Assembly: GCA_024704765.1 (NCBI GenBank)
Contig: JAKMXF010000027.1
Coordinates: 1-64,000, forward strand
Source: Oopsacas minuta
Taxonomy: Eukaryota; Animalia; Porifera
DNA length: 64,000 nt
Direction: 5' to 3'
Shown here in pieces: positions 159 through 44,200 of the stretch (positions are counted from its first letter, which is position 1; each line of letters starts with the position of its first letter). The notes under the pieces are model-generated. The model searched no databases. It saw only the letters and a list, made by a program, of their open reading frames with translations, and was not told where the DNA came from. The position numbers and the translations under genes are program-made.

Positions 159-1340
159 GTATCTAATTATGTCCGTGATTCTATTGGACCAATCCTTCAA
201 GCATTTTCCCTTGACTTTGATGCTAATGAGTTGGTATTAACATTTAATGAACCTGTTCTTAGTTCTACACTTGATATACCTCAAATAACATTCTCAGCTT
301 TTGCCAATTTCTCTGCAACAAACTATTCTTTAACTGAAGGAGAGATAGAATTCTTTTCCATATCCACAGGTGTTCTTCAATTTAGGATACTTTTATCCAG
401 AAATGATATTCGCGAATTAAAGGTTTCCAAAGTATTAGCTACCTCACGCTTTGATACCTTCTTATCACTTGCTTTAAGCGCTGTTCAAGACACGTCCCAT
501 TCTCCAAATTTGGCTATATATTTCCAAAGGGTATCTCGTTTTATTTTAGACACTACTCCTGCTGAAATAGAATACTTTTCTTTGGATTTGGATCTCGGTA
601 TTTTATCTTTGACTTTTAATGATGTTATGGATATCAGTTCTCTCAATCTCAATGGAATACAATTACAGAATTCCAATTATTCAGGAGGTAATTTTCAATA
701 CACCTTGACTTCTGAATCATATGCTCTAAACCAAGATGGATACTTTACTGACATTATATTATCAGAGTTTGACTTGAATAATATTTTCTTCATCCCTCAA
801 TTAGCTACCAGCTTAATTTTACTTTTATATCTTATGGGGCATTCCTGATTGACGACATCTTTGGGACAGATATACTTGCTCTTACTGATGGCAATGCAAT
901 AATGGCGAGTAATTTTATTCCAGATAGTAACCGTCCCCAGCTGATGGATTTTGACTTAGATATTAATAGTAGTTTGATCATCCTTTATTTCAATGAAGCA
1001 ATTGATATAACTACTTTAAGAACTGACAGATTAAGACTCTCAGCTGGCAACAGATCCTCAATTTTTCTACAATTTGACGATCTGAATACAAGTTCCTACA
1101 TCAACATAACAACTCTTCAGATCCCATTACCTATAGAATTTACGAATGTTATCAAGTTAAATCCATCTCTCGCTACTTCAGTGAATAATACCTTCCTATC
1201 TCTAACTAATGAAACTGTGGAAGACTTTGCAAGTAATTTATTATTACCCATTGGTACAGTAAATCCAAAGCAAGTTAGACTCTATCTTCCTGACACCGTA
1301 CAACCAGTACTTATTCAATTTGAATTTGATAATAATCAAG
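159..1340 (+). CDS. Giant tandem-repeat protein, first visible exon (internal exon; 1-nt frameshift at ~815)
   Basis: Acceptor ctatctAG|GTA at 157-158 and donor caaG|GTgatt at 1341. Translation VSNYVRDSIGPILQAFSLDFD... matches the module consensus. ORFs 231-848 and 902-1393 join into continuous modules if one A is restored at 815-816 (LATSL-NFTFISYGAFLIDDIFG). Confidence 0.85.
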
Positions 1341-1977
1341 GTGATTTACTTCTCATTGCTTTATCTACCACAATGTTTGACATCATAGGCTGAGACGGTA
1401 CTGCTACCGAGTCTGGACCGTAGGATTCTGCCTATAACACCAGAGTAATTATGTATAATTTCTATTTATAATAGATCTGTTCAAATTGATATGCCGAAAA
1501 TCCATGAATATGCTCGGGTGTTTGAGTTACTCGGAGTAGAGAATTGTACTAAAAAATACGCGCATTTCCGCTTATTCAAGGAATGTAACTTTAACAATGT
1601 TACACGTAGTAATTTTCTTTCGATTATATGTCAGGTTCACTTTGTCCAAAACATGGTTCGTTGGGGATTTTGTTCCACCTATATATTTTAGGATAGTTTA
1701 TGACTTAAGGACCGCGAAACGAATGTTGCCATTTCCTAATCCTAAATTGTGACCACAAATCATTACATAGCAATTTATATTTACACGTTAAAATGCAGCC
1801 AGGTGTGCGTAATTATAATTGAATCCAATTAATATCTCAGTATTCGTAATCAGCGTAAGATTTCTATTCGTTCAGCGGCTACTTGATCATATATAGAGAT
1901 TTTTCCCTAGCAACGCAAGAATGCCTCTGTTATGTAACAACATTCCATTCTCAAAATTTGTCCCAACCATATAAATA

Positions 1978-2261
1978 CCATATTTCCCCGAATAAGCGCC
2001 CAGGAGCTTATTTTTTTCGTGCACATGAAACCCCGGCGCTTATTCGGGGAATACGGTATTACGCCTACTTTCAATTTTTTAATCGATAGAATCACAATGT
2101 AAACATTATTCATTCATTCAAACTTGTCATATGCCATATACGTATACCTTTATTGATCAACGAATTTCAATCCCTAGCGTTTATTAAAACGGGCACTTAT
2201 AATAGACCGGCGCTTATTTTTCGTTCATATGAAACCCCGGCGCTTATTCGGGGAAATACGG
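1978..2261. mobile_element. Tc1/mariner-pogo type MITE(s), tandem or nested pair
   Basis: TA|CCATATTTCCCCGAATAAGCGCC (1978) pairs with GGCGCTTATTCGGGGAATACGG|TA (ends 2056). A second copy of the right end, GGCGCTTATTCGGGGAAATACGG|TA, ends at 2261. Confidence 0.7.
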
Positions 2262-2434
2262 TACTGCATTATAATATTTCTGGACCAATAAAATATATCA
2301 AAAACAGTCATATAGTATATTCTTACTTTGTGTATCACTTTATACCATTATCATAGTTAACACTTGATTCGACTATCCAACTTTAAGATCAATATACAAT
2401 TGTTCTGAGTCCTTATTACGAACATTTCATTTAG

Positions 2435-3537
2435 GTACACTTTTACTGTTGTTTTCAGAAACTATTGACGCTTCTAGTTTAAATGTTCAAATGATTACTT
2501 TACAGAATTCTGAAAATGTACGAAGTACACTTCTGAATGAATTGTATTCGTTGACTAATTCTACACATTCTCAAGAAAATTCTAATATAATTTCCATTTA
2601 TTTATCTACGTTTGATTCTAATAACATTAAAGCACTAACTGGTTTGGCTGTTAGTATCAATACGACTTACATATCAACTGGTACAGCTCTTGTTGAAGAT
2701 ATGAGTGCAGTTATCGCAAAACCAATTTCCCAAAATTTCGCACTATCTGCAGCCATTTTTGTTGGCGATTCTACAAGACCTCAATTATCTCATGCTGTCC
2801 TCAACCTTACGAGTGAGACAATAAAAGTGTACGTTAGTGAAACTATTCGAGTCGAATCTGTAAATTTGAGTCACTTCTCTTTACACAGTGCATCAAGAAG
2901 ACAAATATTTTTATCAGGTGGAACAGTTTCTAACGTAAATGCACCAGTTTTCTCTATTACTCTCGAAACCTTTGATATATATTTACTTCAACAAGATCAA
3001 AACTTTGCAACTAACTTGACAAACGTGTTTTTTTCTTTCACAGAACAATTTTTGTCAGACATGACTAATAATCCAATAATACCAATCAATGCATCTAATC
3101 CTATTATGTTTTCTGCTTTTATATCTGATGTAATTTCACCTACTCTCATCAGCTTCTCTTTCGATTTGAATAATGGGACCTTAATATTAACATTCTCAGA
3201 GACTGTTAGAGGTCTTACTGTCCCATTTTGTGACATTATCCTAAAGAATTCGGATTCTTCAAGAACGTTTCCTATTTCTAATTTTTCCATTGATAGTGAT
3301 ATTAATTCACCATCCATTCAAATTTTCTTATCAAGAATTGATCTAAATTTAATTAAATCTTCAATTATTGGCGCCTCTTCTTTCTTCATTTTTATGCCTC
3401 AATGCAATATTACAGATATGGCAAGCAACAATTTCACTCCACTTGGAGAAGAAAATGCTCTTGAGTCAACCCGGATTTTTCCTGATATCACATCCCCTCA
3501 GCTATTGTCTTTTATTCTTAATCTGAATTCTTCCAAG
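2435..3537 (+). CDS. Giant tandem-repeat protein, second visible exon
   Basis: Acceptor ttcatttAG|GT at 2433-2434 (phase 1, giving DNNQG-TLLLLFSETID in register with the module). Donor aaG|GTattc at 3538 (phase 0). Confidence 0.9.
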
Positions 3538-3869
3538 GTATTCAGTTATATTCAAATTCCCTTTTTAGTTCAGCTATAATAGGGAGATGCCCTAAGATAC
3601 CCATAGCTTATTTATTGCACGGTAGTGTATGTCATCGAGAGTAAAAATTTGAGGGCAGTTTTACTTTTTTAATTTAGCTGCGCAACTCAATATACTCGGC
3701 ACTATGTGCCTCAAATTCAAAAATAGAGGAAAACTTTCGTAAAAATGGTATACATTTTGATATGATATTTTTTACCATTGTGAGGTAATCCTTAATATGC
3801 CCATATATGGACATTTTCAATATTCCGCAATCTTCAGAGATACTATATCAAAATATATTATCAGGGAAT

Positions 3870-4070
3870 GGGAAGGCATCTATGTACTATAGATTGGCTC
3901 TCTTGATTTGACCATAATTATAACGATTACCGAGTTATAAGTGAATATTGACAAACAATCCATGGTCTCAGCTATAACTTGATAATTTGTGTAAAAATAT
4001 ATTTCGAATATTCTCTAAATTGAACTTCAAAATCAAAGATCAATATTTTCTATATAATGTTTCATATTTG
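3870..4070. repeat. Dispersed repeat, second copy at ~5225-5460
   Basis: ATTGGCT(C/A)TC(T/C)TGATTTGA(C/G)CATAA...CGATTA(C/T)CGA(G/A)TTATAAGTG(A/G)ATATTGACAAA and ATCAAAGATCAAT are shared in direct orientation. Confidence 0.55.
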
Positions 4071-5008
4071 GAGCATTTTTTCTAACATATCAGCCTATTA
4101 GGCGATCACATGATGTCTTTTCTACCTAAAATATTTTCTAGATGTTGACCATGTGATTCATTACATCCTATTTGTGAAACTTGATGATAGCTTCAGTATG
4201 TATGCTAATATCATGAGTTATTTGTACTTCGAATCAACAAAATGCCATTCGCTTGCTAAGTTGCTTTGTACATCTGGTTTAGCTTAACGGATATCACGGC
4301 TGAAATTTACGTTCGTAGTGAAAGGAATACTCAAATTTTACCACTTCGTTTTAACCAATTCCCCAACCAAAACGTAATCTAGCACCTATTTCACGTCATA
4401 AAATCACATATTTTCCCTGCCGTACTCGGTTAACTATGAAACAGATAAGTATCTTTGTGCTTCTGGTCGCTAGCCGCAAGATATATTCTGCACTACTTGC
4501 CTCGAATTCACAAAACACCGAAAAACTTCACAAATTATTTTTCATGGCCTATCGTGATTACTTTTGTTTTTGTTGTAACATTGGAGCTGCTACATAGCTT
4601 TGAGTTGTTGATCTCGGCACTTCGTGCCTTGAGTATTACATACTACTCAAAATTTTCGAATTTAGAGATTTACAACTTTTGTATTGTCATGATGGGTCCA
4701 ATAAATCCATCATGAGTTTGCATTTGGTCAAATTCTGACGTCGGGACATTTGCATATTGAGGGGTATGATTCAAATTTTAACTACTATCATGTATATTTG
4801 CTGAGCAGTTGTTAATTATGTAATTTTCGAAAATCCAAAAAGGTGACAATGACGTTATAATTTCGTAATAGGTGTGAATTTTCGTCCAAGACTCGAACTT
4901 GTCCGTGCCAGGCCCAAAATACCCCTGTATGCCAAAACTCAGCCCTAGGGGTCCTCCAGTTTCTTCAATTTACACATATTAATATATAGATTAATTGCAT
5001 TTTAATAG

Positions 5009-5695
5009 ATGTAAGTTATGCGTTTTTCACATCTTTCCATATATGGTAATACCTCATTAATTTCCGGTATCAGTCAGCTTTAGACATATGAAAGGCATTA
5101 ATTTCACTTCGAGCCGAGTGTATATCCTGTACAATTGTAGAAATACTTGTAATCAGTCCAGAAAAGCACTTTATTCGGAATGTCTCATTTTAATAGCTTT
5201 GTAAACACTATGTATTACAAGGATATGGGAAGTTGGATATGCACTATAAATTGGCTATCCTGATTTGAGCATAACTTCAACGATTATCGAATTATAAGTG
5301 GATATTGACAAAACATGTGTCATCCATGGCCTCTACGGTAACTCAGGAACATGCTAACATTATCATCATAAATTTATATTTTCTACAGAAAAAGTTTTAG
5401 TTCAATTATTATTTCAACATTTGATCAAAGATCAATTTTTATCGCTCTACATGGCATCTAAGATAGATTAATTTAGAGTAATTATTTTCGCTAAATTAGT
5501 GCTTACTAAGCTATTAAATTGAGACATTTCGAAAAAATTGCTTACCAGACTGATTACAGTATTTCTACAATTGTACAGGATATTCACTCGGCTCGAAGTG
5601 AAATTCATGCTCTTCATATGCCTAAAGCTGACTAATGTCGATATAATAAGGATATTACCATACATGGAAAGGTGTGAATATCGAATAACTTACAT
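5009..5695. repeat. Long inverted repeat, ~200-bp arms (5009-5210 and 5497-5695); MITE/foldback-like
   Basis: For example TTTCACTTCGAGCCGAGTGTATATCCTGTACAATTGTAGAAATAC versus GTATTTCTACAATTGTACAGGATATTCACTCGGCTCGAAGTGAAA. Similarity extends over both arms. Confidence 0.8.
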
Positions 5696-6361
5696 TCCAC
5701 AACTATTTCCGGTAAGCTAATGTGACTTTGGACTCCAAAATATGACTTCCTATAAGACAATAATACCTTGTCAGTGTCTAGAATTAGCAGATTTCGGGAT
5801 ATCAAGAAGTATGCTCTACTGTTTTCAGCCTACACTAATTTCACCGTCAAACGAAGTTGAAAGTCCGTGGGTGTAATTACTATATACGATCAGTAGAATG
5901 TGGATTACATTATCTGTGATGAGAAAATTACCATTAAATGTATTAGTGATCACAGCTGCTTGGATGTTGTTCCACGTAATTTTGAGGCACTATTGGCTTG
6001 TTTTTGAGGAATATACCCTGGATTAGTGATCATAAAAAAGCAGGAACGTGAACGGGATCGTTACACAGGGCCAGTTAAATGTACCTTACCACTTTTGGAA
6101 ATGATGTGCCGCCCATGTATGAAAATATGATCTTGTACATATTTGAAACTTTTATCTGTATACTTATCATCGGGACGTCCGGTTACGTAATGGGGTAACA
6201 CATGGCCTACTTAATTCATGCACGGCCTGGTAAGTGACCGAAAAGCCAATAAAAAAGCAGGCTAATTTGTAGGATTAGATTTTAACTTGCTTTATAACAA
6301 AAAAACTCTCAACGATAGACCTAGAGAATGTATTATCAACATATAAGAACACTAAGTTGTA

Positions 6362-7407
6362 AATGATATTTGATTAATAAATTATGCCCTAGGCACGGAG
6401 GTCCTTCCACTATACAGTTGTCTAGTGCAGCAACGTGGCATAGTCTTTGGATTTAGAGAAATTTACTCTTTCAATGCTGAAAATTGAGTAATGGCGGTAC
6501 AATATTATAGTTGCCTAGAACCGAAGATTTTAAACCTCAAGGACCGGCCCTGGCCATAAGGTTGTTGGTTGAATTGAATACTTTGAGAAATTTCTTCTGA
6601 AAAACCTAATATTTCAATTCATCATAGCGATAAAGAGTGTTTTATCAAAATTTAGCACAAAAATTGGCTAGTCAAGAAATTGTAATGATGCGAGACATAA
6701 TAATCTCTAAAGTAGGCCCTATTTCCAATTCCCCGCATATAGAGGTTCGTTTCTCTTCAACCAAATGAATAAAGGTGGACCAAGATGTATCATACTCGAT
6801 TGAATCCATACTGCTTTGTAAAGAGTTAAGATTTGGAACGGGAATTAAATGTATACATTTAGCAAGGTTGCAACCAAATACTATTTGGCGAATAGTTCAA
6901 TATTTAGTTACCAAGCGAATATCAGTATTCGGTATTCGGTTGGTCCAAACCGAATATTTTCAGTAGTATTAGGTTGAGGTAACCAAATATTATCAGTATT
7001 CGATTGGATCAACCAAATAATATCAGTATTCGGTCAAGCAACTATTCATAAATACTGATATTCGGTTCGATCGGTTTCAACCTTGAAATTTAGCTAATAT
7101 TCGAAGTCATTAATTAAAATACAATATGCCATAAATATAATTAATCATGAATCTACGCTTAGTTTAAGTAAAAATTTCGAAGGTTAATAGTGTTTTAAGG
7201 GTGACCATTTCGCCATACACTGTCCTTGAGGTTTCTAAATCTTCCGTTCTAGGCAGCTATAATATTGTACCGCCATTACTCAATTTTCAGCATTGAAAGA
7301 GTAAATTTATATAAATCCAAATATTATGCCACGTTGCTGCACTAGACAACTGCCTAGTGGAAGGACCTGCCCTGCCTATGGCATTATGTGTTAATCAAAT
7401 ATCATTA
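6362..7407. repeat. Long inverted repeat, ~185-bp arms (6362-6544 and 7222-7407)
   Basis: GGTCCTTCCACTA...TGTCTAGTGCAGCAACGTGGCA...TTTACTCTTTCAATGCTGAAAATTGAGTAATGGCGGTACAATATTATAG is present as its reverse complement in the right arm. The spacer holds a short AACC(G/A)AATA..TATCAGTATTCG motif array (~6910-7080). Confidence 0.8.
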
Positions 7408-7707
7408 AAAAGTAGGTTAGACGATCATATTCATTTACTCAAAATCTCTGGGTAAAGCGGAAGTAGAAAATATCCATGGTTAAAAGGGTTTTATGGGGTA
7501 CCATTTTCGTCAAAACAGTAAACATATTATCTATCAAATTTATGTTGTATCAGCATCAGGGTACAAAATATGCTATTTTTAGTAAGAAATGCTATTCCTC
7601 CTATCCAGCTTTAAACACTGTTTTTATAAATTCTAACGCTTAAATTCTGGGTAAAATGATAATTGAAAGCTATTTATGGAACAAAATGAGAAAATATCAG
7701 TGACATA

Positions 7708-9064
7708 CAGTGTGTCAAGATGAAATTGAGACTATGTTTTGACCTAAGTTTCTAAAGATAATCATCACAAGCCTCGAAATACGAGTTGAATTATTAAAAC
7801 GTGTCTATAGACTAATATTTGATCTTAAAGCCATTACTCTGGATCACTAACTTCTGACGTTTTGGCATAGATTGCCAATAAGGTTTCAAAAATTCGGGTT
7901 CTATAGAATCCCAAATAGAGAGAAGGGTTTCTTCAAGTCCACTAAGATTACGAGGAGGGTTCAAATCGATCTGATGTTTGATCCAAGCCCACAAATTTTC
8001 GATCGGGTTTAGATCTGGGCTTCAAGCAGGCCATTCCATACGAAATATATCATGACTTTCATAGAAAGTCTTAGCAAGCTTTGACGTGTGCTTTGGATCG
8101 TTGTCTTCCTGAAAGACCTAGCCGTCAGGGTAAAATACCTGGGCTTGTGTAATCAGACACCGTTTAGGATGTTCCTATATAATTCTCCGGTGAGGTTCTG
8201 CCTAAAACCTTCAACGGAAAGGTCTCATGAGCAGAAATTGATCCCCAAACACGTAATTTTGGACTATGTTTGTTGCTTTGCTTGACCGCTAGTTGGTCTC
8301 CTTTGCACCACAGCCTTATTCTGCCACCAGCTAGCCAAATTGACATCTCATCGCTAAAAACAACTCGCTCCCAGTCAGTTTGTTTGTTATTCTTAGCCCA
8401 CAATACTCTTTGTTGTTTGTGTCGACCCGTTAGCAGGAATACTCCTTACAACCTTGTGGGTGTACCCTCTCCTCTGTAATTCCTTCCTGACCGTCTCATG
8501 GGATAAACTTTTCTGATGAAGATGATGAATCGACTGGCCAGTTTTCGTATGGACATCTTGCGATTCTGATTTACCAAGCTTACAAGAGATCTAGCATCGT
8601 TCACATGTAATATTCTCTGTTTTTCGGTTCCAGATTTCCTCTGTATATCACCGCCCTGACGAAATTTGGCTAATATGCGGAAAACAGTGCTCCTCGGGAT
8701 AGCTGTTCGCTGATGTATTTCGCTACCACTTGTTACCCCCGCATCGAATAATTTGTGGATGAGGTCTCTTCGTTCTAACTCCACCATGCTGAATACGTAT
8801 TTCGACACAAAAGACAAATATAAGCCAAAAACTGATATTGGAGCGGTCTATGGGAATATAGCAGATATTTTCGGGAATGTGTATTCTAAGTGACAGATTG
8901 ATAGGTTGTTCGTGTATTCTAGAATCAATTAACTAATTGTAACTTGATATACATGTATAAATGAATCAGAAAACAAATGCGTTTCATATCTAGCCATAGC
9001 AAATAAAAAAATTCTGAAAATATACACAATTACACGAAAGTCTCAATTTCATCTTGACAGACTG
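7708..9064 (-). mobile_element. Tc1-family DNA transposon (DD34E), full length, 1357 bp
   Basis: 26-bp TIRs CAGTGTGTCAAGATGAAATTGAGACT (7708-7733) and AGTCTCAATTTCATCTTGACAGACTG (9039-9064), one mismatch. TA target-site duplication at 7706-7707 and 9065-9066. Confidence 0.95.
7812..8817 (-). pseudogene. Tc1 transposase, disrupted
   Basis: The N-terminal HTH (IPRSTVFRIL), WERVVFSDE, KLRVWGSIS and VFQEDNDPKH...EWPA*SPDLNPIENLWAWIK are present, with 34 residues between D and E. It is split by frameshifts and carries an in-frame TGA. Confidence 0.92.
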
Positions 9065-9241
9065 TATTACCATTTTGAATAACAATGAAGTAAAGATCAG
9101 ACTCATATCTAAAAAATAAGTTATAATATATTTCATAGAATTGATTATGAAACCACAAAATACCATTCTCGATAATTCATTCTTTACATTCTTAAGTATT
9201 TACTATAACTCACTAACACAGAAAATAAGATTTCCGCTGGT

Positions 9242-10290
9242 ATGGAATTGAGTAAGTTACTAAACCCTGAAATTGTTTCACTTATTGAGAGTTTTGGCCA
9301 CCTAAATGGCTATGTTAAAGTAAAAGTCAAAGCATCAATGTTTGGAGGCAAAACCTTAGCAACGATGACAGGTAAAGGAGGATCGCCATGTATTGTCTGC
9401 AAAGCAACCCGAAGTGATATAAATAGTATTACGAAAGTGGTTTGCAGGTTTCCTTTAGATTGTTCCATAGGGGATATTAAAGAGACAATCCTTCAGTTAA
9501 CCTCTGATGGAAAAGAGCTGCTGAGCTAGAATACAAAGCAACGGTGTGGGATTACACACGAAACTGCAAGTGGCATTGATTTTTTTCCTGCAGCACCTTT
9601 ACAGTCATATCTAAGGATTTTCGATTGGTTCTTGAACCTGGTCTACCGAATAGCAGTAGGAAAGTCCAAGTAGACTGAGGATCCAATGTTGCGAGATTAT
9701 TGGGGTTTAGTATGCAAGCGTATCCACGAACTAACGGAATTATTATTCGACCAACCAGGAGGAAGTGGGAACTCAAGCACTGGTAACATGGCAATAATAG
9801 GTTTTCATATAAAGATGCTCTAACAGAGGTTCACAGGAATTTACCTACATTACTCAGAGTTGCTAATAGTAGTGAAGTTGTAGATGTAAAGAGATTTCGT
9901 GTGTTAAGTCAAGAAACCAACTACTAATCTTACAAACTGCGCCCTAGGTCTCTATTAGTAATACACTCCACAAATCTTTGGCTCATATCTATCAGGTCAT
10001 TGAGAGAAATGACAGGATAGGATTGTGTAGTCTTTCTGAAGAAGGTTTAAGAACAAGGACTAAGTTGATCCGAGAGTTCTCCACACATTTGAGGAGGATT
10101 TCAGATTCCTAAGTGGGTTAAGTGATGTTGCAATGAGGTTCTACATCTATGATTGCCCAATTCTGAATGAAAAAATCAGAAAGATCATCATTTGTTCCAC
10201 CTGTGGTCGAGTAGGCTATCAAAAGAATTGTGTGAAAAATAGGCTAGCAGAAAACGTGACAAATAATATTGATAATGAGGATTCACTCTA
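9242..10290 (+). mobile_element. RAG1-like / Transib-superfamily transposase remnant (C-terminal half of core plus tail)
   Basis: Across several frames and stops: MFGGKT..GKGGSPCIVCKAT; QRCGITHE; APLQSYLRIFDWFLNLVYRI; LFDQPGGSGNSSTGNMA; TLHKSLAHIYQVIERNDRIGLCSLSEEG; LSDVAMRFYIYDCPIL..CSTCGRVGYQKNC. The motif order matches the RAG1/Transib core as I remember it (CxxC, HKTLAH, SE motif). Confidence 0.75.
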
Positions 10291-10618
10291 AAATTCCAAA
10301 GATGAACTCATCTTGTATTTAACAGTAATTCATCAACAAGATACTCATATTTTCTTTATTTTCAGTTAAAACAATATTTTTCATTAATTCCATTTCTTCT
10401 AATATAACTAATTAAGTGAATATCTACTCGTAGACTTTATTACTATATATAGTAATTACGATTACGTTATATATTGAAAAGCTGATGTGTTGCAACAAAA
10501 TAGATCAACAAACGAACCGCAATAGTGGACTTACTTTACAGTAATAATGCATTGTAAAAATCTATTTCTAAAATTAATCCGCGTAAAACCCGTAATGCTA
10601 GTAATACGTAATAATAGT

Positions 10619-16553: not shown

Positions 16554-16629
16554 GTATTTTAATTGATATATTGCGATGGTTATTTATATAAATGCATTAA
16601 ATTACTTTTGTAATTGATTGGAGTATGTA

Positions 16630-32200: not shown

Positions 32201-35200
32201 TGAGAACTATTTTTGTTGATAACGTGAATAATTACATAATTAATCTAGAATTATCAGTCAACGATCTTAATGCTATTAAGCAGATTAGACCACTGTGTAC
32301 TTCAGTTAATAATACATTCATTTCTTTTACATCCAATGCTTTTTACGATATGAACATGAATCCAGTATATTCTGTGTCTAATGTTTCTGCTCTCAGGGCA
32401 TCTCAATTTTTCCAGGACTCCACAAATCCTGTATTGTCTGACTTTTCCTTTGATGTGGATATGAACTCTCTTATTCTGACATTCACTGAAACAGTTGATA
32501 TAACTACCTTCAACGGTTCCCAGCTAACCTTTTTGGATAGTATTAATGGAACATCTTTTGTTCAGTTATCTGATGTTTTATTAGTGAATACTGATTCTGA
32601 ACCAATCCTTTACCTCCGCCTTTTGGATTCTGATTTGAATAGTATAAAAGGTGTCCCAGACCTAGCTAAAATGCTCACTAACACATATCTTAGTTTCACT
32701 TCTGTTCTCATTCATGATATGGCTGGACTTAATGTCCTGGCTATTGAACCTTCAGGTGCATTAATTGCTACTTCCTATTTTGAGGATCAGACTGGTCCTA
32801 TTCTACAATTCTTTGATTTGGATATGGATGAAGGTGTTCTCGTCCTCATCTTTGATGAAGTCGTACGGGTAAGTAGCATTAAACTCAATCGCTATACTCT
32901 CATGGACAGTCAGAATATGTCTAGTTTCATCTACACACTAGATGGTGAAGTTATAGCGAATAATGATTCCGTTTCTATCAGTTTAAAGTTAGATGATAAC
33001 GATATATTAGGTATAAAAACAAACCTAAACTTAGCTACGAGCAGAAACAATACATGGCTCTTTTCTGATGACGCTGCTGCACGAGATGTCTCATTAAAGA
33101 AGAATCCAAATAAAAATATTACCCTTTCTGTACGGAACTATGTTGCTGATTCTACTGGCCCACAAATTATCATTGATGATGTCTTACTAGATTTAGATGC
33201 AGGGATAATTGTCCTTGGATTTAATGAACCAGTCAGTCGAGATTCTCTGAACGCCACCGGGATATCTCTTCAAACTGATTCTAACTCAACAACCAGATTC
33301 CGATTGACAGGAGGGTATACAAACTCACCAGATGGATTCGTCATTATTATAACTCTAACAAATAATGATCTAAACGCTATCAAACAGAATAATCTTCTCT
33401 GTACTTCATTCGGGATAGACTGTTATCTCTCTGCAAACAAATTTACCATACTGGACAATTCTGGGAATGGCCTTATTCCGATATTACCTCCCAATTCACA
33501 GCTGATATCACAGATTGTGAATGATACGGATCTTCCTAGTCTCGATAACTTTAGTTTGGACATAGATTCAGGAACTCTTATCTTAACATTCTCCGAGACA
33601 GTAAATAGCAATTCTCTTAGTATAGCAGAAATAAGGCTACAGACGACAAGAGATGATCGTTCTTCTAGATATCAGTTTCACCATTTGACCATCGGCACTG
33701 TACTCAATCTTGTTAATAGTACAACAGTCACCATTTCTCTCAGTCTCTTTGATCTAAATTCAATCAAAGTACTTCTCATTGGTGAATTTGTTAATTCAAC
33801 CTGGCTCGTAGCATCCAATAGTACAATTACAGATATGAATGGAAATTTCAATTATCCTATAATCTCGAATCTAAATACTCTGAATGTAGCTAATTTGACA
33901 AGAGACACAACTTCACCGAACTTGTCTAGTTTTACATTGGACTTGAATACTGGCTACCTCAACATTTCTTTTGATGAGAGTATGGATGTGAGTATGATTA
34001 ATGTGAATTTTATCACTCTGCAAACTAGAACGAATAGTTATAACTATACTCTATCTGATAGTTCTAGCAGTTTGGTTGACGGACCTTCCCTATCGATTCT
34101 ACTGTCTTTGACAGACAGCAATAACATTAAGAGAATCACTGAGCTAGCTACATTTGTGAATAATTCTTTTATTTCTTTCCCTAATAAATTGATCACTGAC
34201 ATGTTTAACAATAATATTAACCAAATCCTGACTACTAATCCTACTCAAGTTTCCACGTTTATTGAGGATATTACTCCACCAACTCTTCAAATGTTTGATT
34301 TGGATCAAACAAAAGAACAAATAACTCTCTACTTCTCAGAAACAATTCGTCATCTTACTCTAATAGCCTCACAAATTACTTTACAACAACAAACAACAGG
34401 TGGAGTTTACTATAAACTAACGAATGGGGTTGTCAGTGTGCTGGTAGATGATCCTATCATCATCCTCAACCTTACTCAATTTGATCTTGATAATATTAAG
34501 TTTCTGACTGCTGTTGCTACAAATCATTCTAATACTTATATGTCAATTACATCCAGATTTATACAAGATATGAATGGTAACTATATAGAATTGATATCGA
34601 ATATTTCTTCTCTCCAAGTTACTACATTTGTTGAGGATCAAATTGATCCAGAGGTGCTAGCTTTTCATTTGGACATGGATGCATCTAGTTTGCACTTAAC
34701 CTTCAGTGAGACTGTGAACCACAACTCCTTTAATCCTATTCTGCTGACGATTCAGAATAATATGCTAGCTGATACGTTCCTAACGCTAACTGGAGGGAGA
34801 GTATCTGAGAAAAATAGTACTGTAATAACTGTATATCTTAATACTCCAGATTCTAACTTCTTAAAACAAGATGCTGGCATCGCGACTTCAACATCAGATA
34901 CATTCATTGCTTTTCCGAATGGTTTAATCCGAGATATGAACGATAATGAAATACAGGCTCGAAATAACGAGACTGCTTTGATGGCTCGAAATTTTACCGA
35001 TGATACTACTCCGCCAAGGCTTGTCTCTTTCTATTTTGACTTGAATAGTGCATTGCTGTATTTATCTTTTTCTGAATCCATAAATGGGAACACTTTTGAT
35101 ACAACGCAGTTAACATTCCAAGCACAAGTTAACCTAACTGACCTGAGATTTAGCTTTACATTATCTGGCGGTAGTTATACACATGATAACTTCACTTCTC

Positions 35201-38200
35201 TAACCACCACCCTGATTAAGAATGACCTTGATGAACTGAAGAGATTATCCTACCTCGCTATCTCACTTAATTCAACCTTTGTTAGTCACACATCTCAGTT
35301 AATCAGAGATATGAATGGTAACTTAATTTCTCCAATTTTACCTTCTGCAGCGTTACAGGTTCTTAACTTCACTGAAGATACAACGGCACCAACATTCGTG
35401 GATTGGGAAATTGATTTGGACACCGGAACTTTTGTTCTCTATTTCAGTGAGACTGTAAACAGTTCTAGTAGCAATTTCAATGGAATTACTCTAATTGACC
35501 ATTCAACTGCTGACAATAACTCCGTATTTATTGTTCTGGATCAAGGTAGCATATTATCTCCAGACAATACTAATATCAGCTATAACTTTACGACTGATAA
35601 TTTGAATTTGATTAAAAAACTAGATCTCTGTACTGACCGCCTGGAAACTCTTGATTGTTTTGTTGGATTATCTTCTTACACAATCAACGATATGAGTGGT
35701 ATTTCTTTAATTCCCGTTCTTCTCAACCAATCCATTCAAGTATTTGATTATATTAGAGATAGCACTCAGCCAGAATTGACTCAATTTCTTCTCTTCAATG
35801 CTTCAAGCGGGACTGTTTCTCTCTTATTTAGCGAGACTGTGAATATTTCTAGTGTTGACATCACCACCATATCGCTGCAAAGGTGGGCGTTTGATGACAA
35901 TACATTACCCAGACCATTCCCTATAGTCCAACTCAATCCCTCTATCATCCTCACCAAAGAAAATGGTCTGGAAGTATCGTTCATAATTGCGGACTATGAA
36001 CTTAATTTAATAAAACAATTCAACACGCTTTGTGTAAATACACGATCTTGTCATATTCGATTCAGTCAAAATTTGTTGAGGGACATGGCAAATAACCGAG
36101 TAGTGCAGGTAATTGATAATTTTATTTCTGTTCCAGTTTCCGAGTACGCCATGACATTTATTGAAGACTTAGTGAATCCATCATTGATTTCGTTTTCTAT
36201 TGATCTCACAATTCAAAATGTTACTTTGACATTCGATGAGACAGTCGACATCACAACATTCGATTCCTTGCAAATTACATTCCAAAATTCTCATAATTCC
36301 TCCCAGTTTTATATGCTCACTAGTCCAGGGAACGTGCTTAGCGTAGAGAATTGGATATATGTTCAATTCTTAATATCAGATCAGGACCTACTGGTTATTA
36401 AGTACATGGAAGAGTTATTGACTAATGTTAATGACACGTATATTTCTGTAACTTCTACTTTGGTTCTTGACATGAATCAGAATGAGTTAGAAGCAATTCC
36501 ATTCTCTAGTGCCCTAAGGGCTACTTCTTACGAGCGTGATTCTATACCTCCCCAACTAACCACATTCACTCTTAATTTACAGGAATACTATCTCCTCTTA
36601 ACATTTGATGAACCTGTTAAAGTGAACACAACTATTCCTAGTTATATTTCTCTCCTCAGTACGGATAACATATCGATTAGCGGAACCAGCATTTACACAC
36701 TAACTGGAGGTTCGTTTGGTTATTACACTGTTATACCAAGTAAAACTGTAGTTAAACTTAATCTCACTCCGGGTGATATCCGCGAAATCAAACTTGATCC
36801 AGAAATCTCAACTAGCGTATTCATCTCCTTCAGACAGAATATGATACAAGACATGAGCTATAATTCTATCTTGGCTATTTCAAATTCTTCAGCTATAGTT
36901 GGTACAATTATTCTAGACGCAATAAATCCTGCATTGATTCAATTTGATATCGATTTAGATGAAGGGACTTTAACCTTAACATTCAATGATGTTGTTTCCA
37001 GGGCCAGCTTATTGAGTGAACGAATTACTCTATTAAACATAAGTTCTCTGTCAGATTCCACTTATTATACATTGACAGGCGGATCAACCTCTTCTTTAGA
37101 TGGTTACATTATTGTAGTTGATTTTCTCCTAATAGATCTTAATGCCCTTAAGAAAAACCAGGGACTTGTGACTGATATTAACAATACATGGATAATCCAC
37201 CCCAGGGAGTTGATACAAGATGAGAGGGGGCTGTATGTATTTCCCCATGCTAGCTCTGATGGTATTCAAGTAACCTCTTTTATTTCAGACACTACTGCAC
37301 CTGTACTCTTGGGGTTCAATTTTGATATGAACGAAGGGATTATTTACTTGCTCTTCTCTGAGACTGTTAAATCTGATAGTCTCAGCATTACGAACCTCTT
37401 ATTACAAAACTCGTATTCTATTAATAGTTCAACTGTAATTCTACACAGATTATCTAATCAGAGTACTCATACAATAGAAACAGATGATGTGACTATTAAT
37501 ATTACTATTTCTCAGTACGATCTGAATGAACTCAAAAGGCTCTATGGTCTAGCGATTTCTGTTATGACTACTTTCCTATCCTTTCCTGCAAATACTTTAT
37601 TGGATATGAATGAAAACCAAATCACTCCCGTATCATCTATGAATGCAACTATTGTACAAGCGTTTACTCCTGATTCAACCCCTCCTACAATTACGAAATG
37701 GAATTTAGACACCAACCAAGGTACCATGTTATTTTGGTTTAGTGAAACAGTGAATGCTTCTTCGTTTACTCCTCAGAGCATTACAATTCAAGCATCTGTA
37801 AATATATTAGATCCCCAATCTCTATCTTTCACATTGAATGAAGGTTCGCATAGCACCCTAGATGATACTGTTATATATTTTAATTTCTCTAAATATGACT
37901 TAGATGAAGTTAAACGATTAGAATCCATTGCAACTTCTGCGAATAATTCATTTATTTCTTATGATGATAATCTTATCTCCGATATGAATGGTAATAAATT
38001 GACAGCTAGATCAAATGGAAATGCTATACAGGTCTCGGATTATATTTCAGACACTTCTCCTCCTACTCTACTGTATTTCATCCTAGATATGGATGAGGGA
38101 TTTATTCTTTTTACCTTCTCTGAGACCGTTAAATCAGATTCAATAATATTCCAATCTCTCACTCTACACAATCAGCCCTATTCTGTTAATACTAGTATTG

Positions 38201-41200
38201 ATAGTTTCACTCTAACAAACGGTAGTGTTTCTATTCGTGACTCTACGATTATTCAAGTAAATTTTACTAAATCTGACTTGGATACCATTAAGGAGATCTA
38301 CTCTTTGGCTGTCTCTATTAATACTTCATTTGTTTCGATCAATCAAGGCGGCATCTTAGACATGAATAGAAATGAATTGATTGCTGTTACAATACAATCT
38401 GTCGATTTTATCGAGGATAATACACCTCCATTGTTGATATCTTACGATTTGGATCTAAATAGAGGTCTTCTTTTACTCACTTTTTCGGAAACAATGAATA
38501 GAAATACATTAACTTTATCAAATATAATACTTCATAATTCTTATTTTATTGATCCAGAATATTTCGTTATTCTTGGTAATTCTGATTACTCACTGGACAA
38601 TGATACTAAGATTACAATTTCGCTCAATTCAGATGATCTCAATGAAATTAAGCGTTTGAGAATGCTCGGTACCCATGAGAACAATACATATATTACTTTC
38701 AATGATTCCTTAATTTCTGATATGAACGGTAACTCTATCACTCCTTCTCTAGGGGTGAGAGTTAATACATTTATTCCTGATCTGGTTTCACCGGAATTAA
38801 TTCGATTTTCAATAAACCTGACTAGTGGCCAACTTAGCCTAATATTCTCAGAGACAGTATCAGCAATATCTCTAGACATACCAAGTTTATTTTTGCAGAA
38901 TATTAAAAATTCTACAACTTCTGAGGAGTATGAATTTCTACAGCTCTCAAATTCTTCATACTTATCTTCCCCTGATGGTATTTCTCTTATAATCTATTTC
39001 AGTTTGGCAGATTTGAATAAAATGAAGAGGTTACGAACTTTATCCACTAATGTTAATGACACGTTTATCTATTTCAATTCTTCTCTCTTGCGAGATATGA
39101 ATGGGAACAGGATAATTGCTGTTCAACCTGACAATGCGCTCCAAGTATATGACTTCTTTGGGGATACAATCAAGCCTAATCTGGAAGCATTTGATCTAGA
39201 CTTGGATAATGGAGAGTTAAAATTTTATTATTCTGAAACAATAGATATAGCTTCGTTTAATATTAATGATCTGGCCTTGCAATCTTCACAAAATATTTCT
39301 GGCTCTAATTTCCCTGAGTACAACATACTACATGATTGTAATGGATGTGCTTACTCAAATGACACAGATAATCATGTTACTATAGTTAAACTTGGAATAC
39401 TTAATCTAAACTTTATTAAGAAAGAGTACTATCTTGCTCAATCCCGAGGTAGTTCCTTTCTCTCATTCTCCTCTTCTCACGTCAGAGACACATCTCTAAA
39501 CGAAATTATTCCCTATCCTACCTCCTCAGCATTGCAGGTCTCCCAATTCACACCTGACACCACTCCTCCGATTGTACTGTCCTTCTCACTTAATCTCACT
39601 TCCGAGGAATTATCTCTCACTTTTGATGAGATAATTAATGTATCTTCTCCTGTCATCAACCGAATAGCCGTACAAAATACTCCATATTTATCTGCTACTA
39701 CTAGTACCATGACAAATAGCAGCATTCATTATCTAACCACATCTTCCCTCGTTACACAGTATGATTCTACTGTTATCACTATAAGTCTCTCAAATTATGA
39801 TATTAATTCTATTAAATTGTTGCAAGAACTGGCCGTTTCTTTGTCTACCACTTTCATTTATCTGCAAAACATGTCAGTAATCGATAACAGCTTGATTGGA
39901 AATTCGAATTTGTTCGTAATATTGAACTCCGGTATATTTTATCCAGATAAAACTGCTCCGCTTCTTCTAAATTATACTGTAGATTTGGATATTGGTACTC
40001 TAACTCTCAATTTCGACGAACCAATTAATGTGTCTACCATAGATTATACTGGACTCTTGCTTCAGAATAGTATAGTTTCGAATAATATCAATAATGAATT
40101 ACGGTTAACCGGCGGTAACACTATTAGTAGAAACGGTCTTCAGATTGTAATAAACTTACTAATTCAAGATTTGAATGAATTAAAACGTAAAGACTTACTC
40201 TATATTAATGGTGAATCATCTTACCTTGTAGTGGATTCTTCATTCATTCAGGATATGAATGCTAATCCAATTTATCCAATAGAAAATGGAGCTGCGCTTC
40301 AGACCATCTCATTCAGAACTGACTCCACTGGGCCAGCACTTGTTAGATTTGATCTCGATATGGACGAAGGTCGAGTAAGCTTATATTTCACTGAAACAGT
40401 AAATATCTCTTCCTTTATGATTAGTAAAGTAACTCTTCAAAGCTTCCCTTCTATCCGGAACAATTCTCTCGCTCAATACAGATTGATTGGTGGGAACATT
40501 CTTACTACAGACAATAGCATAACTGTATCCTTCCATCTATTAGAATCTGATCTGAATATTATCAAGACTAGACGTATTGGATTGAACAATATGACTAGTT
40601 GGATAGTTTTTCCCAGAGATACTATACACGATATGACTGGTATATCAATATTGCCACAAGTGGATTCAGTCAATGCTACTCCTTCCACAGATTTCTATCC
40701 AGATGCTACTAGACCATTTCTAATCAGTTATGATATTGATCTCTCAAGCGAATGTCTTACTTTAACATTCTCTGAAACCATACTCACCAGTACTCTCTCC
40801 ATCAGTGAACTATTATTCCAGAGTGTGGAAATTCCTGTACGTGTATATTTCGAATCTTATCACTTGAGCTCGAACTCAAAAACAAACTCTTCAGACAATC
40901 CAATAATAAAGATCGAACTTGGTGATGCTGATCTTAACGAGATTAAAAAGCTGACAGAATTATTAGTTGATAAGAATCATACGTATTTATCATTTCCTGC
41001 ACAATCTATCACTGATTATATTGGAAATATTGTACTGGGTATACTACCTAATTTCCCATTACAAGTTAACAATTTTATTTCTGACTTTATACGCCCCGAA
41101 CTATCCGCGTTTTCACTTAACCTAACTTCAGAAATATTAATGTTTTACTTTTCAGAAACAATGAACTATTCTAGTTTCTCAGTAGATCAGATCACTTTCT

Positions 41201-44200
41201 CATCCCAACCAATTTCTGAAGATTTCCTTTCGACTATTCAGTATCACACACTAACAGGCTTCAAGAACTACCTTACTGAACACTCCTCAGTTTTTATGTT
41301 AATGTTATTGGATAGTGATCTCAATCGCTTGAAACAGCTCTATGAACTAACAACGACTAGATTCAACTCGTTTATTTCAATTTCCAACTCTACTGCTTTT
41401 GATATGTTCGGGAATCGTGTTAATGAAATATCCACTTTAGCTCCTCTCTCTCCTGTTAGCTTCTTCCCCGACACCATTCGCCCTTATCTTACCTCATTCG
41501 ATCTTGATCTAGATGGTGATGGTAATCTTGTACTCTCATTTTCAGAAACTATGAAAATTTCATCACTCAACATTTCTCAACTAAAAATACAGCCTCTCCC
41601 ACAATCATTTTACTTTTTCAACTTTTTCTATTCACTTGAATCTCAAACCAACAGTTCGCTTGTAACAATTTACTTTGACATTAAGGATCTCAATTCTTTG
41701 AAGCTTAGTTCTAATATTGCAATAAACGCTGAGACAACTTATCTCACGTTTGGCTCTGCATTTATCACAGATATGAACGGCAATCCTATTCTAGCATTAT
41801 CTAATGGAAATGGAAGGAAAGTCTCTCAATATATTTCAGATTCTACTCTACCACATCTTGTAAACTTTTCTCTTGATCTATCCCTTGCTGTGATTGAGTT
41901 AACATTTTCTGAAGTGGTCCATTCTTTAACTCTAAATCTGAACAGCATTTCTCTACAGAATACTTCAAATTCTGTTGAAAACAGCAGAATGTATTCTCTC
42001 ACTGGTGGAAACATTTCTTCTATCAACAGCACTACAGTACTTATTACGCTCAATTTTGTTGATTTGAACAATTTGAAACTCTTGACTGACTTAGCAATTT
42101 CCCGTAACACAACATTCATATTCCTAAAGAGAGGGACAATTAAAGATACCAATTATAATGATTTAATAGAGATTTACAGTACTGATGCATTGATAGCATC
42201 TAGCTTTATTGGAGATAATATCAGTCCTACCTTAGATAGATTTGAAGTCGATCTGGATGAAGGATTATTACGTATAGACTTTAGTGAAGCTATCAATATT
42301 GATTCACTGCAACCCGTACAACTTACTCTTCTTGATTGTTGCTATTATACCAGATTATCTAACTACTCTAGCACCTCTCTCTACAATCACTCTCTAACCG
42401 GAGGTGATTGTGTTCATTTTGATCAAACATATTTTACCTGTACTCTCACTAATGTGGATTTGAATGAGATTAAACTACAGAATATTTGTACTAATATAAA
42501 CAAAGCCAGAGATTGCTGTTTGACGATTTCTGGAAATACGATATTTGATTTATCGAATAATCCAGTTATGCCTATCTTCGAAGGATGCGGGTTTCCAGCT
42601 AATACATTTATTGCTGATACTACTCCGCCTTCTGTTCTTGAATTTACTGAATTTAACCTGAATGATGGAACTGTTAAACTGAGCCTCGATGAGACTATTG
42701 ATGTCAATTCTGTGGACTTAACCAAACTTACTCTTCAGTCCTTCTTCCGTACTCCTAAATCTACGTTCACACTTACAGGGGGATACTTAACTTCTCCTAG
42801 TTCCAACATGATTACATTCAGATTAACTGCTTCTGATATTGACAAAATCAAACTTCTACCAGATCTCTGTTCTCACCCAAATAATTGTTGGTTATCAATT
42901 TCTGATTTATTCCTATTTGATAAAGCCAATAATTCGGCTAATCCTATTTCTTCTTACAGTGCCAGTGCTATTGCTACAGCTGTATATATAGATGATACGA
43001 CTTCCCCCAATTTGTTATCATATTCATTCAATTTACAGAACAATACTCTCTTGTTAACTTTTGATGAGCCTGTCAATGCTATGTCTCTTGAGCCTACTTC
43101 TCTTACTTTTCTAAACAAGCACTCCAGTTCAATTTCTTCACTCTCTTATGTGTTGACAGGAGGATCCAGTTCAGAGCTGGATGGGAAGGTAGTCTCACTA
43201 TTTCTTACCACAAGTGACGTCAATGCTCTCAAATCTTTTGATGACTTAGCATCAAATCTGATGAATACCTACTTGTTTATAAATGATAGTTTTATTTCTG
43301 ACCTCGCATCAGGATCCCCTAATAGCGTTACCCCAATTTCAGAATTATCAGCACTTAGAGCTTCTAACTACACTAAAGACATTACCCCGCCTACTGTTAG
43401 TTCATTCTATTTGGATTTAAATTCTGATACTATTTTGATAAATTTCTATGAGCCTATTAGAATTTCAACACTCGAAATAGGCAAATTCACCTTAGTCTCA
43501 GACAGAGTCGGGCCAAATGACTTGCTCATCCTCACTGGGGGGATAATTGACCCTTTAAGTAATTTTAATGGGACTACTAGCATCTTAATCCACCTGCTCA
43601 AACCTGACATACGTTACCTAAAGCTTTCCACTATTATTGCTCAAACAGAAGAGAGTACCTTTTTGATTGTAGAAGAGAATGGTATCAAAGATATGGCCAA
43701 TAATAGTGTTCAAACACTTACAATTTCTGATGCTGTAATGGCTACCCAATTAGTTACTGACTATACTAGAGCTTCTCTTCTCAGCTTCTCCTTAGACATG
43801 AATCTTGGATTCCTAAACCTCACTTTTGATGATATCATACGCACTTCTACTCTCTATTCCAGTGCCTTTACTCTTCAAGACTCGACAGTAGTAAATATAG
43901 ACTACATGCACACCCTCACCAGTTCAACTATAACAAATAGCGTGGATGGATACATTGTAACTCTGGAATTGTCACGAATGGACCAGAATGAAATCAAGCT
44001 TAACATAGGTTTAGGGACTAATATTGGCAATTCCTATCTGAGCATGAGAGCAGATGCATTTGATGATTCTTTCGCTGTAGATGTATTAGCAGTGACGCAT
44101 GAAAATGGCATCCAAGCTACCCTATATATTGAGGACAATTCTCCTCCTTATCTGCTGGACTTTACACTTGATATGGATTTAGGTATCATTATCCTCACTT

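What the first reader, a model, noticed from the sequence alone, without database searches (positions are those of the whole stretch)
555..43900. Strict 18-module super-repeat (titin-like higher-order periodicity)
A distinctive module with FND/FDD in place of FSE/FDE and a D-G/N-Y motif recurs at codons 615, 23518, 30280, 36982 and 43825. The spliced spacings are 2267, 2254, 2234 and 2281 aa, and I count exactly 18 modules in each interval, including the one that crosses three introns. Position-specific signatures recur. Module 8 has D-x-[SA]-[LF]-x2-N (15856, 26359, 33085, 39883, 46681). Module 9 has F[DN]EP with an NG/DG turn. Module 10 has a shortened helix loop (KQLGIG, KRRLIA, KVLLIG, KTRRIG). 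Modules 15-16 carry Cys pairs (first Cys at 22138, 28984, 35629, 42487). A fixed period could act as a molecular ruler or set the register of a lateral polymer (inference). The exact count across introns also independently supports the exon model.
Basis: seen in the sequence. Interest (0 to 1): 0.9.

Follow-up and report, generated by a model that had tools for sequence, protein, structure and literature searches.

The report
Giant sponge protein with 18-module super-repeat
A glass-sponge gene encodes a secreted protein of about 127 similar 125-residue Ig-like modules whose central part repeats every 18 modules, and the module count and order are unchanged across three sponge classes, but what it does is unknown.

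Summary
With splice sites from a spliced 18-kb RNA contig and one read-supported base at an assembly error (807/808), window 159-53847 is one open frame of 12,528 aa. It consists of exactly 100 contiguous ~125-aa modules.

Module similarity peaks only at lags 18, 36, 54 and 72 (z 7-11); spacing is 2258±17 aa. The signal is weak: 33.6% in-phase against 30.6% out-of-phase identity. It covers about five copies, ending near 47475 rather than 43900. The last 17 modules are aperiodic.

Orthologues, including Dysidea and Corticium, align module for module without gaps and carry the same signatures at the same indices. Two begin with a signal peptide 38 modules upstream, which implies a full protein of a half-module plus 126 (7×18) modules.

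The module is a distant SbsA/Big_5-type Ig-like fold. Paralogues, one noted earlier in this genome, have other periods (23, 19-20, 24-25).

The likeliest origin is ancient block duplication, frozen since before the sponge classes diverged. A ruler or lattice role is untested. I found no published description.

The parts
159..1340 (+). Exon (the window begins inside the gene). It encodes modules idx -11 to the start of -8. Acceptor AG at 157-158.
   Evidence: HMM hits; RNA contig of run X4 covers 157-1338/1340; sequence.
807..808 (+). One base missing from the assembly. It causes an apparent frameshift in module idx -10.
   Evidence: Contigs of all four runs insert one base here. With it the frame is open.
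1341..2434 (+). Intron (GT..AG). It splits module idx -8 near module position 21.
   Evidence: Joint 1338/1340 to 2433/2435 in the X4 RNA contig; sequence check.
2435..3537 (+). Exon: modules idx -8 (rest) to the start of -5.
3538..14847 (+). Intron of 11.3 kb (GT..AG). It splits module idx -5 near position 23.
   Evidence: The same RNA contig is contiguous across 3537|14846-8.
14848..16553 (+). Exon: modules idx -5 (rest) to -1 (first about 90 positions).
16554..20252 (+). Intron (GT..AG) carrying very high-copy repeats.
   Evidence: RNA contig contiguous across 16551-3|20251-3; depth near 0-5 in X4 against 32 in exons.
20253..53847 (+). Giant last exon of 33.6 kb: end of module -1, then modules idx 0-88, then the stop codon at 53845-53847.
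   Evidence: ORF; 89 contiguous modules. Orthologues end at the same module with a conserved C-terminal Cys motif.
20362..27180 (+). Super-repeat copy c1, modules idx 0-17 (the register is arbitrary).
27181..33888 (+). Super-repeat copy c2, modules idx 18-35.
33889..40683 (+). Super-repeat copy c3, modules idx 36-53. It is closest to c1 (0.270).
40687..47475 (+). Super-repeat copy c4, modules idx 54-71. This is the last periodic copy.
47479..53823 (+). Aperiodic C-terminal tail, modules idx 72-88. The last module has 3 Cys and a phase-4-type Cys motif.
   Evidence: In-phase 0.199 against out-of-phase 0.196; no shift helps.
23437..23802 (+). Marker module idx 8 (core motif FND). Its in-phase partners are idx -10 (534-908), 26 (30199-30573), 44 (36901-37272) and 62 (43744-44118).
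21850..22641 (+). Cys-pair modules idx 4-5. Their partners are 22-23 (28678-29466), 40-41 (35362-36135) and 58-59 (42199-42972).
   Evidence: family D12.
42199..42594 (+). Module idx 58 with 8 cysteines. This is unique in the protein and conserved in orthologues.

Best explanation
The window holds the 3' four-fifths of one expressed sponge gene; earlier notes of this scan name the genome as the glass sponge Oopsacas minuta.

The protein:
- It is a secreted, heavily N-glycosylatable giant. By orthologue collinearity it has a signal peptide, a Cys-rich half-module and 126 full modules, about 15.9 thousand residues in all.
- Each module is a roughly 125-residue Ig-like beta-sandwich with one short helix.
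- The module is a distant relative of the bacterial SbsA/Big_5 domain.
- There is no other domain and no membrane anchor.

Origin of the 18-module periodicity: it is the trace of ancient block duplications of an 18-module unit. Lag 36 is the strongest, which suggests a later duplication of a larger block. The whole array equals 7×18, with the two end copies diverged beyond recognition.

Age: the duplications predate the split of the Oopsacas, Dysidea (demosponge) and Corticium (homoscleromorph) lineages. Orthologous modules (37.9% identity) are closer than in-phase paralogues (33.6%), and these are closer than out-of-phase modules (30.6%). Since then no module has been gained, lost or moved in any compared stretch. 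Purifying selection therefore acts on each module's identity and on total length.

Inferred, not shown:
- The protein is a long, rather stiff glycoprotein rod. Taking about 4-4.5 nm per Ig-like domain from general knowledge gives roughly 75-80 nm per 18 modules and about 0.5 µm in all.
- The periodically placed special modules (Cys-pair modules, altered core motif, shortened helix loop) would offer regularly spaced cross-link or binding sites in an extracellular meshwork or coat.
For: Gene and expression:
- An 18,133-nt spliced contig in run X4 joins the exons at GT..AG sites. X4 depth is near zero in the introns.
- The resulting frame is open for 12,528 aa and gives 100 contiguous modules.

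Periodicity.

Fold:
- The AlphaFold2 model of two modules has pLDDT 95.7.
- The best Foldseek hit is an 'SbsA Ig-like domain-containing protein' (TM 0.85, rmsd 2.5 Å over 244 residues; organism not shown by the tool). It is followed by bacterial SbsA and S-layer proteins.
- Big_5 is the commonest sub-threshold Pfam hit (10 of 75 module pairs).

Orthology and frozen architecture:
- Module-level alignments to P0001, P0006, P0002, P0003, P0013 and P0016 are single gap-free diagonals.
- The same signatures sit at the same indices in orthologues. Examples are 8 Cys at idx 58, 3 Cys at idx 88, and K...I[GA] at 35, 53 and 71.
- Cross-species matrices show secondary diagonals at ±18 and ±36.
- P0001 and P0006 start with signal peptides, and their module arrays begin at idx -38 and -37. 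Four orthologue models end 1-2 residues after module 88.

Ancient rather than recent origin: no DNA repeat is longer than about 85 nt or above about 80% identity.

Block duplication is the family's habit: paralogues have their own periods, and S. rosetta PTSG_06209 has a strong lag-25 copy (0.416 against 0.11).
Against: - The in-phase excess is only about 3 identity points, and the module tree is far from sorted (65 changes where a perfect sort needs 17).
- The A/B alternation is not clean: c3-c4 (0.261) is nearly as high as c1-c3 (0.270).
- The N-terminal 27 modules lie outside the window. The totals of 127 and 7×18 rest on two other species.
- The species behind most orthologues are unnamed.
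- The rod shape, the lengths in nm and any cross-linking role are inference only. No localisation, partner or phenotype is known.
Confidence: 0.75

Rival explanations
1. The 18-module period is kept because it matches the spacing of a partner lattice or sets the stagger of a lateral polymer, as titin's 11-domain repeat matches the 43-nm thick-filament repeat.
For: - Module count and order are frozen across three sponge classes.
- All 18 phases show an in-phase excess.
- Special modules recur at fixed phases in every copy.
- The conserved odd Cys in the last module and the Cys-rich N-terminal cap could allow polymerisation.
Against: - No partner is known.
- Paralogues in the same organisms have periods of 23, 19-20 and others, so there is no common lattice.
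- The conservation level is not periodic (p=0.21).
- The signatures could persist simply because each module is under its own purifying selection.
- Both ends of the protein are aperiodic.
Confidence: 0.2
2. The periodicity is an artefact or is recent: a mis-assembled or collapsed repeat, concerted evolution by gene conversion, or chance recurrence of short motifs.
For: - The assembly does contain one single-base error in this gene.
- The in-phase excess is small.
Against: - Copies share only about 34% protein identity, and no long DNA tracts match.
- An independent RNA contig spans 18 kb of the gene.
- The same period and the same index-specific signatures occur in other species.
- Shuffles and neighbouring moduli give no signal.
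Confidence: 0.02

Closest known systems
Titin A-band super-repeats (7- and 11-domain Ig/Fn3 patterns)
   Same: - A fixed number of Ig-like domains per higher-order repeat.
- In-phase domains are more alike than neighbours.
- A periodic core is flanked by non-periodic ends.
- The pattern is conserved between species, and the protein is very large.
   Different: - Here the protein is secreted: orthologues have a signal peptide and there are about 3 N-glycosylation sequons per module.
- There is a single module type, of SbsA/Big_5-like fold, not an Ig/Fn3 pattern.
- The period is 18, and no partner filament is known.
- There is no sequence relationship to titin.
Nebulin 7-module super-repeats
   Same: A hierarchical repeat built by block duplication.
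   Different: - The number of nebulin super-repeats varies widely among species (PMC7754682, title and abstract). Here the module number is invariant across sponge classes.
- Nebulin modules are about 35-residue helical units (general knowledge, not tested here), not Ig-like domains.
Bacterial SbsA/Big_5 (PF13205) and SWM_repeat surface proteins (S-layer proteins, giant adhesin-like proteins)
   Same: - The same beta-sandwich fold (Foldseek).
- Sub-threshold Big_5 matches, and atlas neighbours carry Big_5 or SWM_repeat.
- Tandem arrays on cell surfaces.
   Different: - This is a eukaryotic gene with spliceosomal introns.
- The module has an added helix and its own motifs.
- No module reaches Pfam's threshold.
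- It has 126 modules with an 18-module super-repeat.
Sponge aggregation factors (Calx-beta + Wreath proteins)
   Same: Very large secreted sponge glycoproteins made of many beta-sandwich repeats.
   Different: - No Calx-beta match here (Pfam). The Wreath domain has no Pfam model, so its absence was not tested directly.
- Aggregation factors are described as unique to demosponges, with 1-66 Calx-beta domains (PMC12749355).
- This protein is shared by three sponge classes with a fixed module number.
Chlamydomonas flagellar membrane glycoprotein FMG1B (PDB 9gos)
   Same: A giant surface glycoprotein built of Ig-like domains. Foldseek probability 1.0.
   Different: Low TM-score (0.28) and 12% identity. 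The resemblance is at fold level only, and no super-repeat comparison was made.

Membership tests
Big_5 / SbsA Ig-like domain (PF13205) | Match to the Pfam model above its gathering score | tested here: not met
   No family at E≤0.1 in a 2000-aa piece. Scanned as 75 two-module pieces, Big_5 is the commonest hit (10 of 75) but only at best E=0.0011, below threshold.
Big_5 / SbsA Ig-like domain (PF13205) | Ig-like beta-sandwich fold shared with S-layer SbsA-type domains | tested here: met
   AF2 model with pLDDT 95.7. Top AFDB cluster hit is an 'SbsA Ig-like domain-containing protein', TM 0.85. Many bacterial SbsA and S-layer proteins follow at E 1e-8 to 1e-10.
Titin-type super-repeat architecture | Fixed number of domains per repeat, with in-phase domains more similar than out-of-phase | tested here: met
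   Peaks at lags 18, 36, 54 and 72 only; 18 of 18 phases positive.
Titin-type super-repeat architecture | The repeat is a pattern of different domain types (Ig and Fn3) | tested here: not met
   One HMM covers all 100 modules contiguously.
Titin-type super-repeat architecture | The period matches the axial repeat of a partner filament | not testable with these tools
   No partner or localisation data are available.
Sponge aggregation factor | Calx-beta domains plus a C-terminal Wreath domain | tested here: not met
   No Calx-beta in the Pfam scans. The protein ends right after the last module, leaving no room for a separate C-terminal domain. The Wreath model itself is not in Pfam and was not run.
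Orthologue group of the 18-period giant (Dysidea avara and Corticium candelabrum 'uncharacterized proteins') | Module-for-module collinearity, the same C-terminus, the same index-specific signatures | tested here: met
   Gap-free diagonals; shared signatures; conserved terminal motif.

The most novel reading that the evidence does not exclude
This family of giant periodic rod glycoproteins may be the unknown building material of the regular extracellular meshes of collar cells, namely the flagellar vane or the collar glycocalyx of choanoflagellates and sponge choanocytes. The super-repeat would then set the node spacing of the mesh.

Circumstantial fit only:
- Every named hit but one distant alga (Aureococcus) came from sponges or choanoflagellates.
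- In S. rosetta the vane is a glycoprotein-like mesh of roughly 3.5-nm filaments. They run about 80 nm before the first node, and their composition is unknown (PMC9671500).
- A chain of Ig-like domains has about that thickness, and 18 modules would be roughly 75-80 nm (general knowledge).

Nothing here tests the localisation.
Probability: 0.08. Interest if true: 0.85.

Novelty: new variant of a known kind. Interest (0 to 1): 0.62.

Why it matters
- Super-repeats that are conserved domain for domain are textbook features of muscle rulers such as titin. Here the same formal architecture appears in a secreted protein of animals without muscle.
- The roughly 126-module order seems not to have changed since sponge classes diverged. 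That degree of constraint on a 1.7-MDa repeat protein implies a precise structural job that nobody has described.
- The family has no Pfam model, and database entries are 'uncharacterized' or 'hypothetical'. Gene models are split into fragments (the Dysidea protein is annotated in at least two pieces).
- Named members were found almost only in sponges and choanoflagellates. The family is therefore a candidate component of a shared extracellular structure of collar-cell organisms.
- Practically, the module HMM plus lag analysis gives a way to annotate these genes correctly.

Tried and rejected
- Pfam on long pieces: no hit.
- PDB sequence profile search: nothing credible.
- PDB Foldseek: only generic Ig tandems at low TM.
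I could not read orthologue loci or the gap between P0006 and P0002.
- Cluster look-up gave no taxon names for the ENA orthologues.
- A 9-module half period: none (lag 9 z 0.0, lag 27 z 0.3).
- A shifted register for the last 17 modules: none.
- Periodicity in the strength of between-species conservation: not significant (27% of variance, p=0.21).
- Homology between the 18-unit and the 23-unit of the paralogues: no significant diagonals (P0015, P0010).
- Recent gene conversion or duplication: no long DNA repeats.
- Literature searches for the S. rosetta gene id, for sponge super-repeats and for giant proteins found no description. The O. minuta genome paper does not mention the gene.
- Aggregation-factor identity was rejected.
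- The clean 'A/B alternation' is only partly supported.
Full report
**What is there**

The + strand carries one gene that enters the window from the left. An HMM built from the sequence's own repeats finds 89 contiguous ~125-aa modules in the 11,169-codon ORF 20338-53847. It finds eleven more in three upstream exons.

Public runs from one sample were laid on the window. One of them (X4) behaves as RNA. Its depth is about 32 over exons and 0-5 over introns. It holds an 18,133-nt contig that joins 1340|2435, 3537|14848 and 16553|20253, each GT..AG after allowing for two ambiguous bases.

Contigs of all four runs carry one extra base after 807/808. The apparent frameshift in module idx -10 is therefore an assembly error. 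With these corrections, 159-53847 is an uninterrupted frame of 12,528 aa. It is made of exactly 100 modules with no gap longer than 6 residues. An acceptor AG at 157-158 shows that the gene continues upstream of the window.

**The module**

No Pfam family reaches threshold. Big_5 (PF13205) is the commonest sub-threshold hit (10 of 75 two-module pieces, best E 0.0011).

An AlphaFold2 model of two modules, using the other modules as alignment, is very confident (pLDDT 95.7, pTM 0.88). Each module is a beta-sandwich with one short helix.

Foldseek's best AlphaFold-DB cluster is an 'SbsA Ig-like domain-containing protein' (TM 0.85, rmsd 2.5 Å, 26% identity). It is followed by bacterial SbsA and S-layer proteins. 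The protein atlas also points to Big_5 and SWM_repeat neighbours.

The module is therefore a divergent eukaryotic relative of the SbsA/Big_5 Ig-like domain. There are about three N-glycosylation sequons per module.

**The periodicity**

- Lag means. All-against-all global alignment of the 100 modules gives a flat background of 0.1886 (sd 0.0046). Sharp peaks occur only at lag 18 (z 7.5), 36 (z 11.2), 54 (z 7.2) and 72 (z 6.9). Lags 9, 17, 19, 27, 35 and 37 are at background.
- Shuffles. None of 5000 shuffles of module order reaches the lag-18 value. In the 89 big-exon modules, 30% have their best partner at a multiple of 18, against 4.5% expected.
- Dot-plot. A BLAST self dot-plot independently gives the highest identity (31.1, 33.1 and 31.4% against about 29%) and the highest scores at lags 18, 36 and 54.
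- Tree. On a module tree the phase label needs 65 changes against 80.3±2.0 when shuffled. Moduli 16, 17, 19 and 20 behave like shuffles.
- Phases and spacing. All 18 phases show an in-phase excess. Spacing at lag 18 is 2258±17 aa.
- Size of the effect. It is real but small: 33.6% identity in phase against 30.6% out of phase.

All are verified:
- The F[ND]D core motif occurs in idx -10, 8, 26, 44 and 62 and in no other module.
- The shortened loop K...I[GA] occurs in -1, 17, 35, 53 and 71.
- D.[SA][LF]..N occurs in -3, 15, 33, 51 and 69.
- Cys pairs occur in 4/5, 22/23, 40/41 and 58/59.
- F[DN]EP occurs in all five phase-16 modules, but is not exclusive to them.

**Limits of the periodic zone**

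The last 17 modules (idx 72-88, nt 47479-53823) have no in-phase signal in any register (0.199 against 0.196). They lack the Cys pair at 76/77.

Lag 36 is the strongest, and c1 resembles c3 (0.270). However, c3-c4 (0.261) is almost as high, so an A/B alternation is only partly clean.

**Orthologues**

A search of 5.8 billion proteins found giants made only of this module. They include uncharacterized proteins of Dysidea avara (Demospongiae) and Corticium candelabrum (Homoscleromorpha), and more distantly Salpingoeca rosetta PTSG_06209.

Earlier notes of this scan identify the genome as the glass sponge Oopsacas minuta. An O. minuta paralogue among the hits is consistent with that.

Module-level alignment gives single, gap-free diagonals:
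- P0002 (Dysidea) covers idx 29-88.
- P0003 covers 33-88.
- P0013 covers 41-88.
- P0016 (Corticium) covers 42-88.
- P0001 covers -38 to 24.
- P0006 (Dysidea) covers -37 to 12.

Orthologous modules share 37.9% identity on average. Every cross-species matrix also shows weaker diagonals displaced by ±18 and ±36.

The signatures sit at the same indices in the other species. Examples:
- 8 Cys at idx 58 (6 in Corticium).
- 2 Cys at idx 80.
- 3 Cys at idx 88.
- K...I[GA] at 35, 53 and 71.
- F[ND]D at 44 and 62.

Four orthologue models end 1-2 residues after module 88 with a conserved Cys-containing motif, so the stop at 53845-53847 is probably genuine. P0001 and P0006 begin with signal peptides, and their module arrays start at idx -38 and -37.

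The full protein is thus inferred to be a signal peptide, a Cys-rich half-module and 126 full modules. That is 7×18 modules and about 15.9 thousand residues, with no anchor and no other domain. In the orthologues the first ~12-20 modules are not periodic. The layout is therefore aperiodic N-terminal zone, about five recognisable copies, then aperiodic tail.

**Family context**

Other giants of the family have their own periods:
- 23 in many members, including a second Corticium protein and a protein on the same contigs as P0001.
- 19/38, 20 and 36 in others.
- 24-25 in choanoflagellate-type members.
- S. rosetta PTSG_06209 has a much fresher lag-25 copy (0.416 against 0.11).

A first-stage note reports a 23-domain super-repeat elsewhere in this same genome. 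I saw the same period in homologues but did not read that locus. I found no significant alignment between the 18-unit and the 23-unit.

**Interpretation**

The ranking orthologue > in-phase paralogue > out-of-phase, together with the absence of any long DNA repeat, shows that the copies arose by block duplication before these sponge lineages split. They have not been homogenised since. The unbroken collinearity shows that the module number and order have been held fixed.

Whether the period itself is functional is open. In its favour are the retention of phase-specific special modules in every copy and the frozen count. Against it are three points. The strength of conservation is not periodic (p=0.21). 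Paralogues have different periods. Module-wise purifying selection alone could preserve the signatures.

I therefore treat 'ancient block duplication, frozen architecture, secreted rod-like glycoprotein' as shown or strongly supported. 'Periodic cross-link or binding sites, ruler' is inference. Dimensions are from general knowledge of Ig-like domains, not measured: about 75-80 nm per 18 modules and about 0.5 µm overall.

**Comparison with the known, and novelty**

- Formally the architecture is titin-like. It fails two defining titin features: mixed domain types and a sarcomeric context.
- It is not a sponge aggregation factor (no Calx-beta match and no room for a separate C-terminal domain).
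- Literature searches found no description of the gene or of its super-repeat.
- The Aphrocallistes genome paper mentions a 49,014-aa single-exon protein without analysing it.
- A speculative link to the compositionally unknown flagellar vane or collar mesh of choanoflagellates and sponges (3.5-nm filaments, about 80 nm to the first node) is recorded as the novel case only.

The scan had already noted the 36-module layer on this same stretch and a 23-domain analogue elsewhere in the genome.

Noticed in passing
window 807-808: Single-base deletion in the assembly. Contigs of all four public runs carry one extra base, which removes the apparent frameshift in the giant gene.
   Followed up: yes
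window 2157-2277; 18837-19230; 19625-20018: Very high-copy repeats inside introns 1 and 3. Summed contig depth reaches about 15,000 and 50,000-110,000, against about 40 for the flanks. There are many rearranged joints, presumably from dispersed repeats or small transposons.
   Followed up: no
window 61821-62880 (- strand): A neighbouring TRAF-like gene. One ORF has a TRAF-type zinc finger (E 3e-10) and another has a MATH domain (E 2e-18).
   Followed up: partly
window 3538-14847 (intron 2): An 11.3-kb intron with higher GC (0.37-0.39) than the gene. The one ORF I scanned there (9242-9529) had no Pfam hit.
   Followed up: partly
window 42199-42594 (module idx 58): One module carries 8 cysteines. 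This is unique in the protein and conserved at the same index in four orthologues (6 in Corticium). It may be a singular cross-link or binding node.
   Followed up: partly
window 53685-53823 (module idx 88) and orthologue N-termini (P0001, P0006): The last module has an odd third Cys next to the stop, and the N-terminal cap is Cys-rich. This hints at end-to-end disulfide linkage. idx -37 to 88 is exactly 126 = 7×18 modules.
   Followed up: partly
homologues P0010, P0015, P0017, P0019, P0034, P0039, P0076, P0078-P0081: Other giants of the family have their own super-repeat periods (23, 36, 4, 14, 24-25). The 18-type and 23-type genes coexist on the same contigs and in the same species.
   Followed up: partly
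introns at 1341, 3538 and 16554, and the acceptor at 157-158: Two introns split modules at almost the same module position (about 21-23), one at about position 90, and one falls exactly between modules. The remaining 89 modules lie in one intron-less 33.6-kb exon.
   Followed up: no
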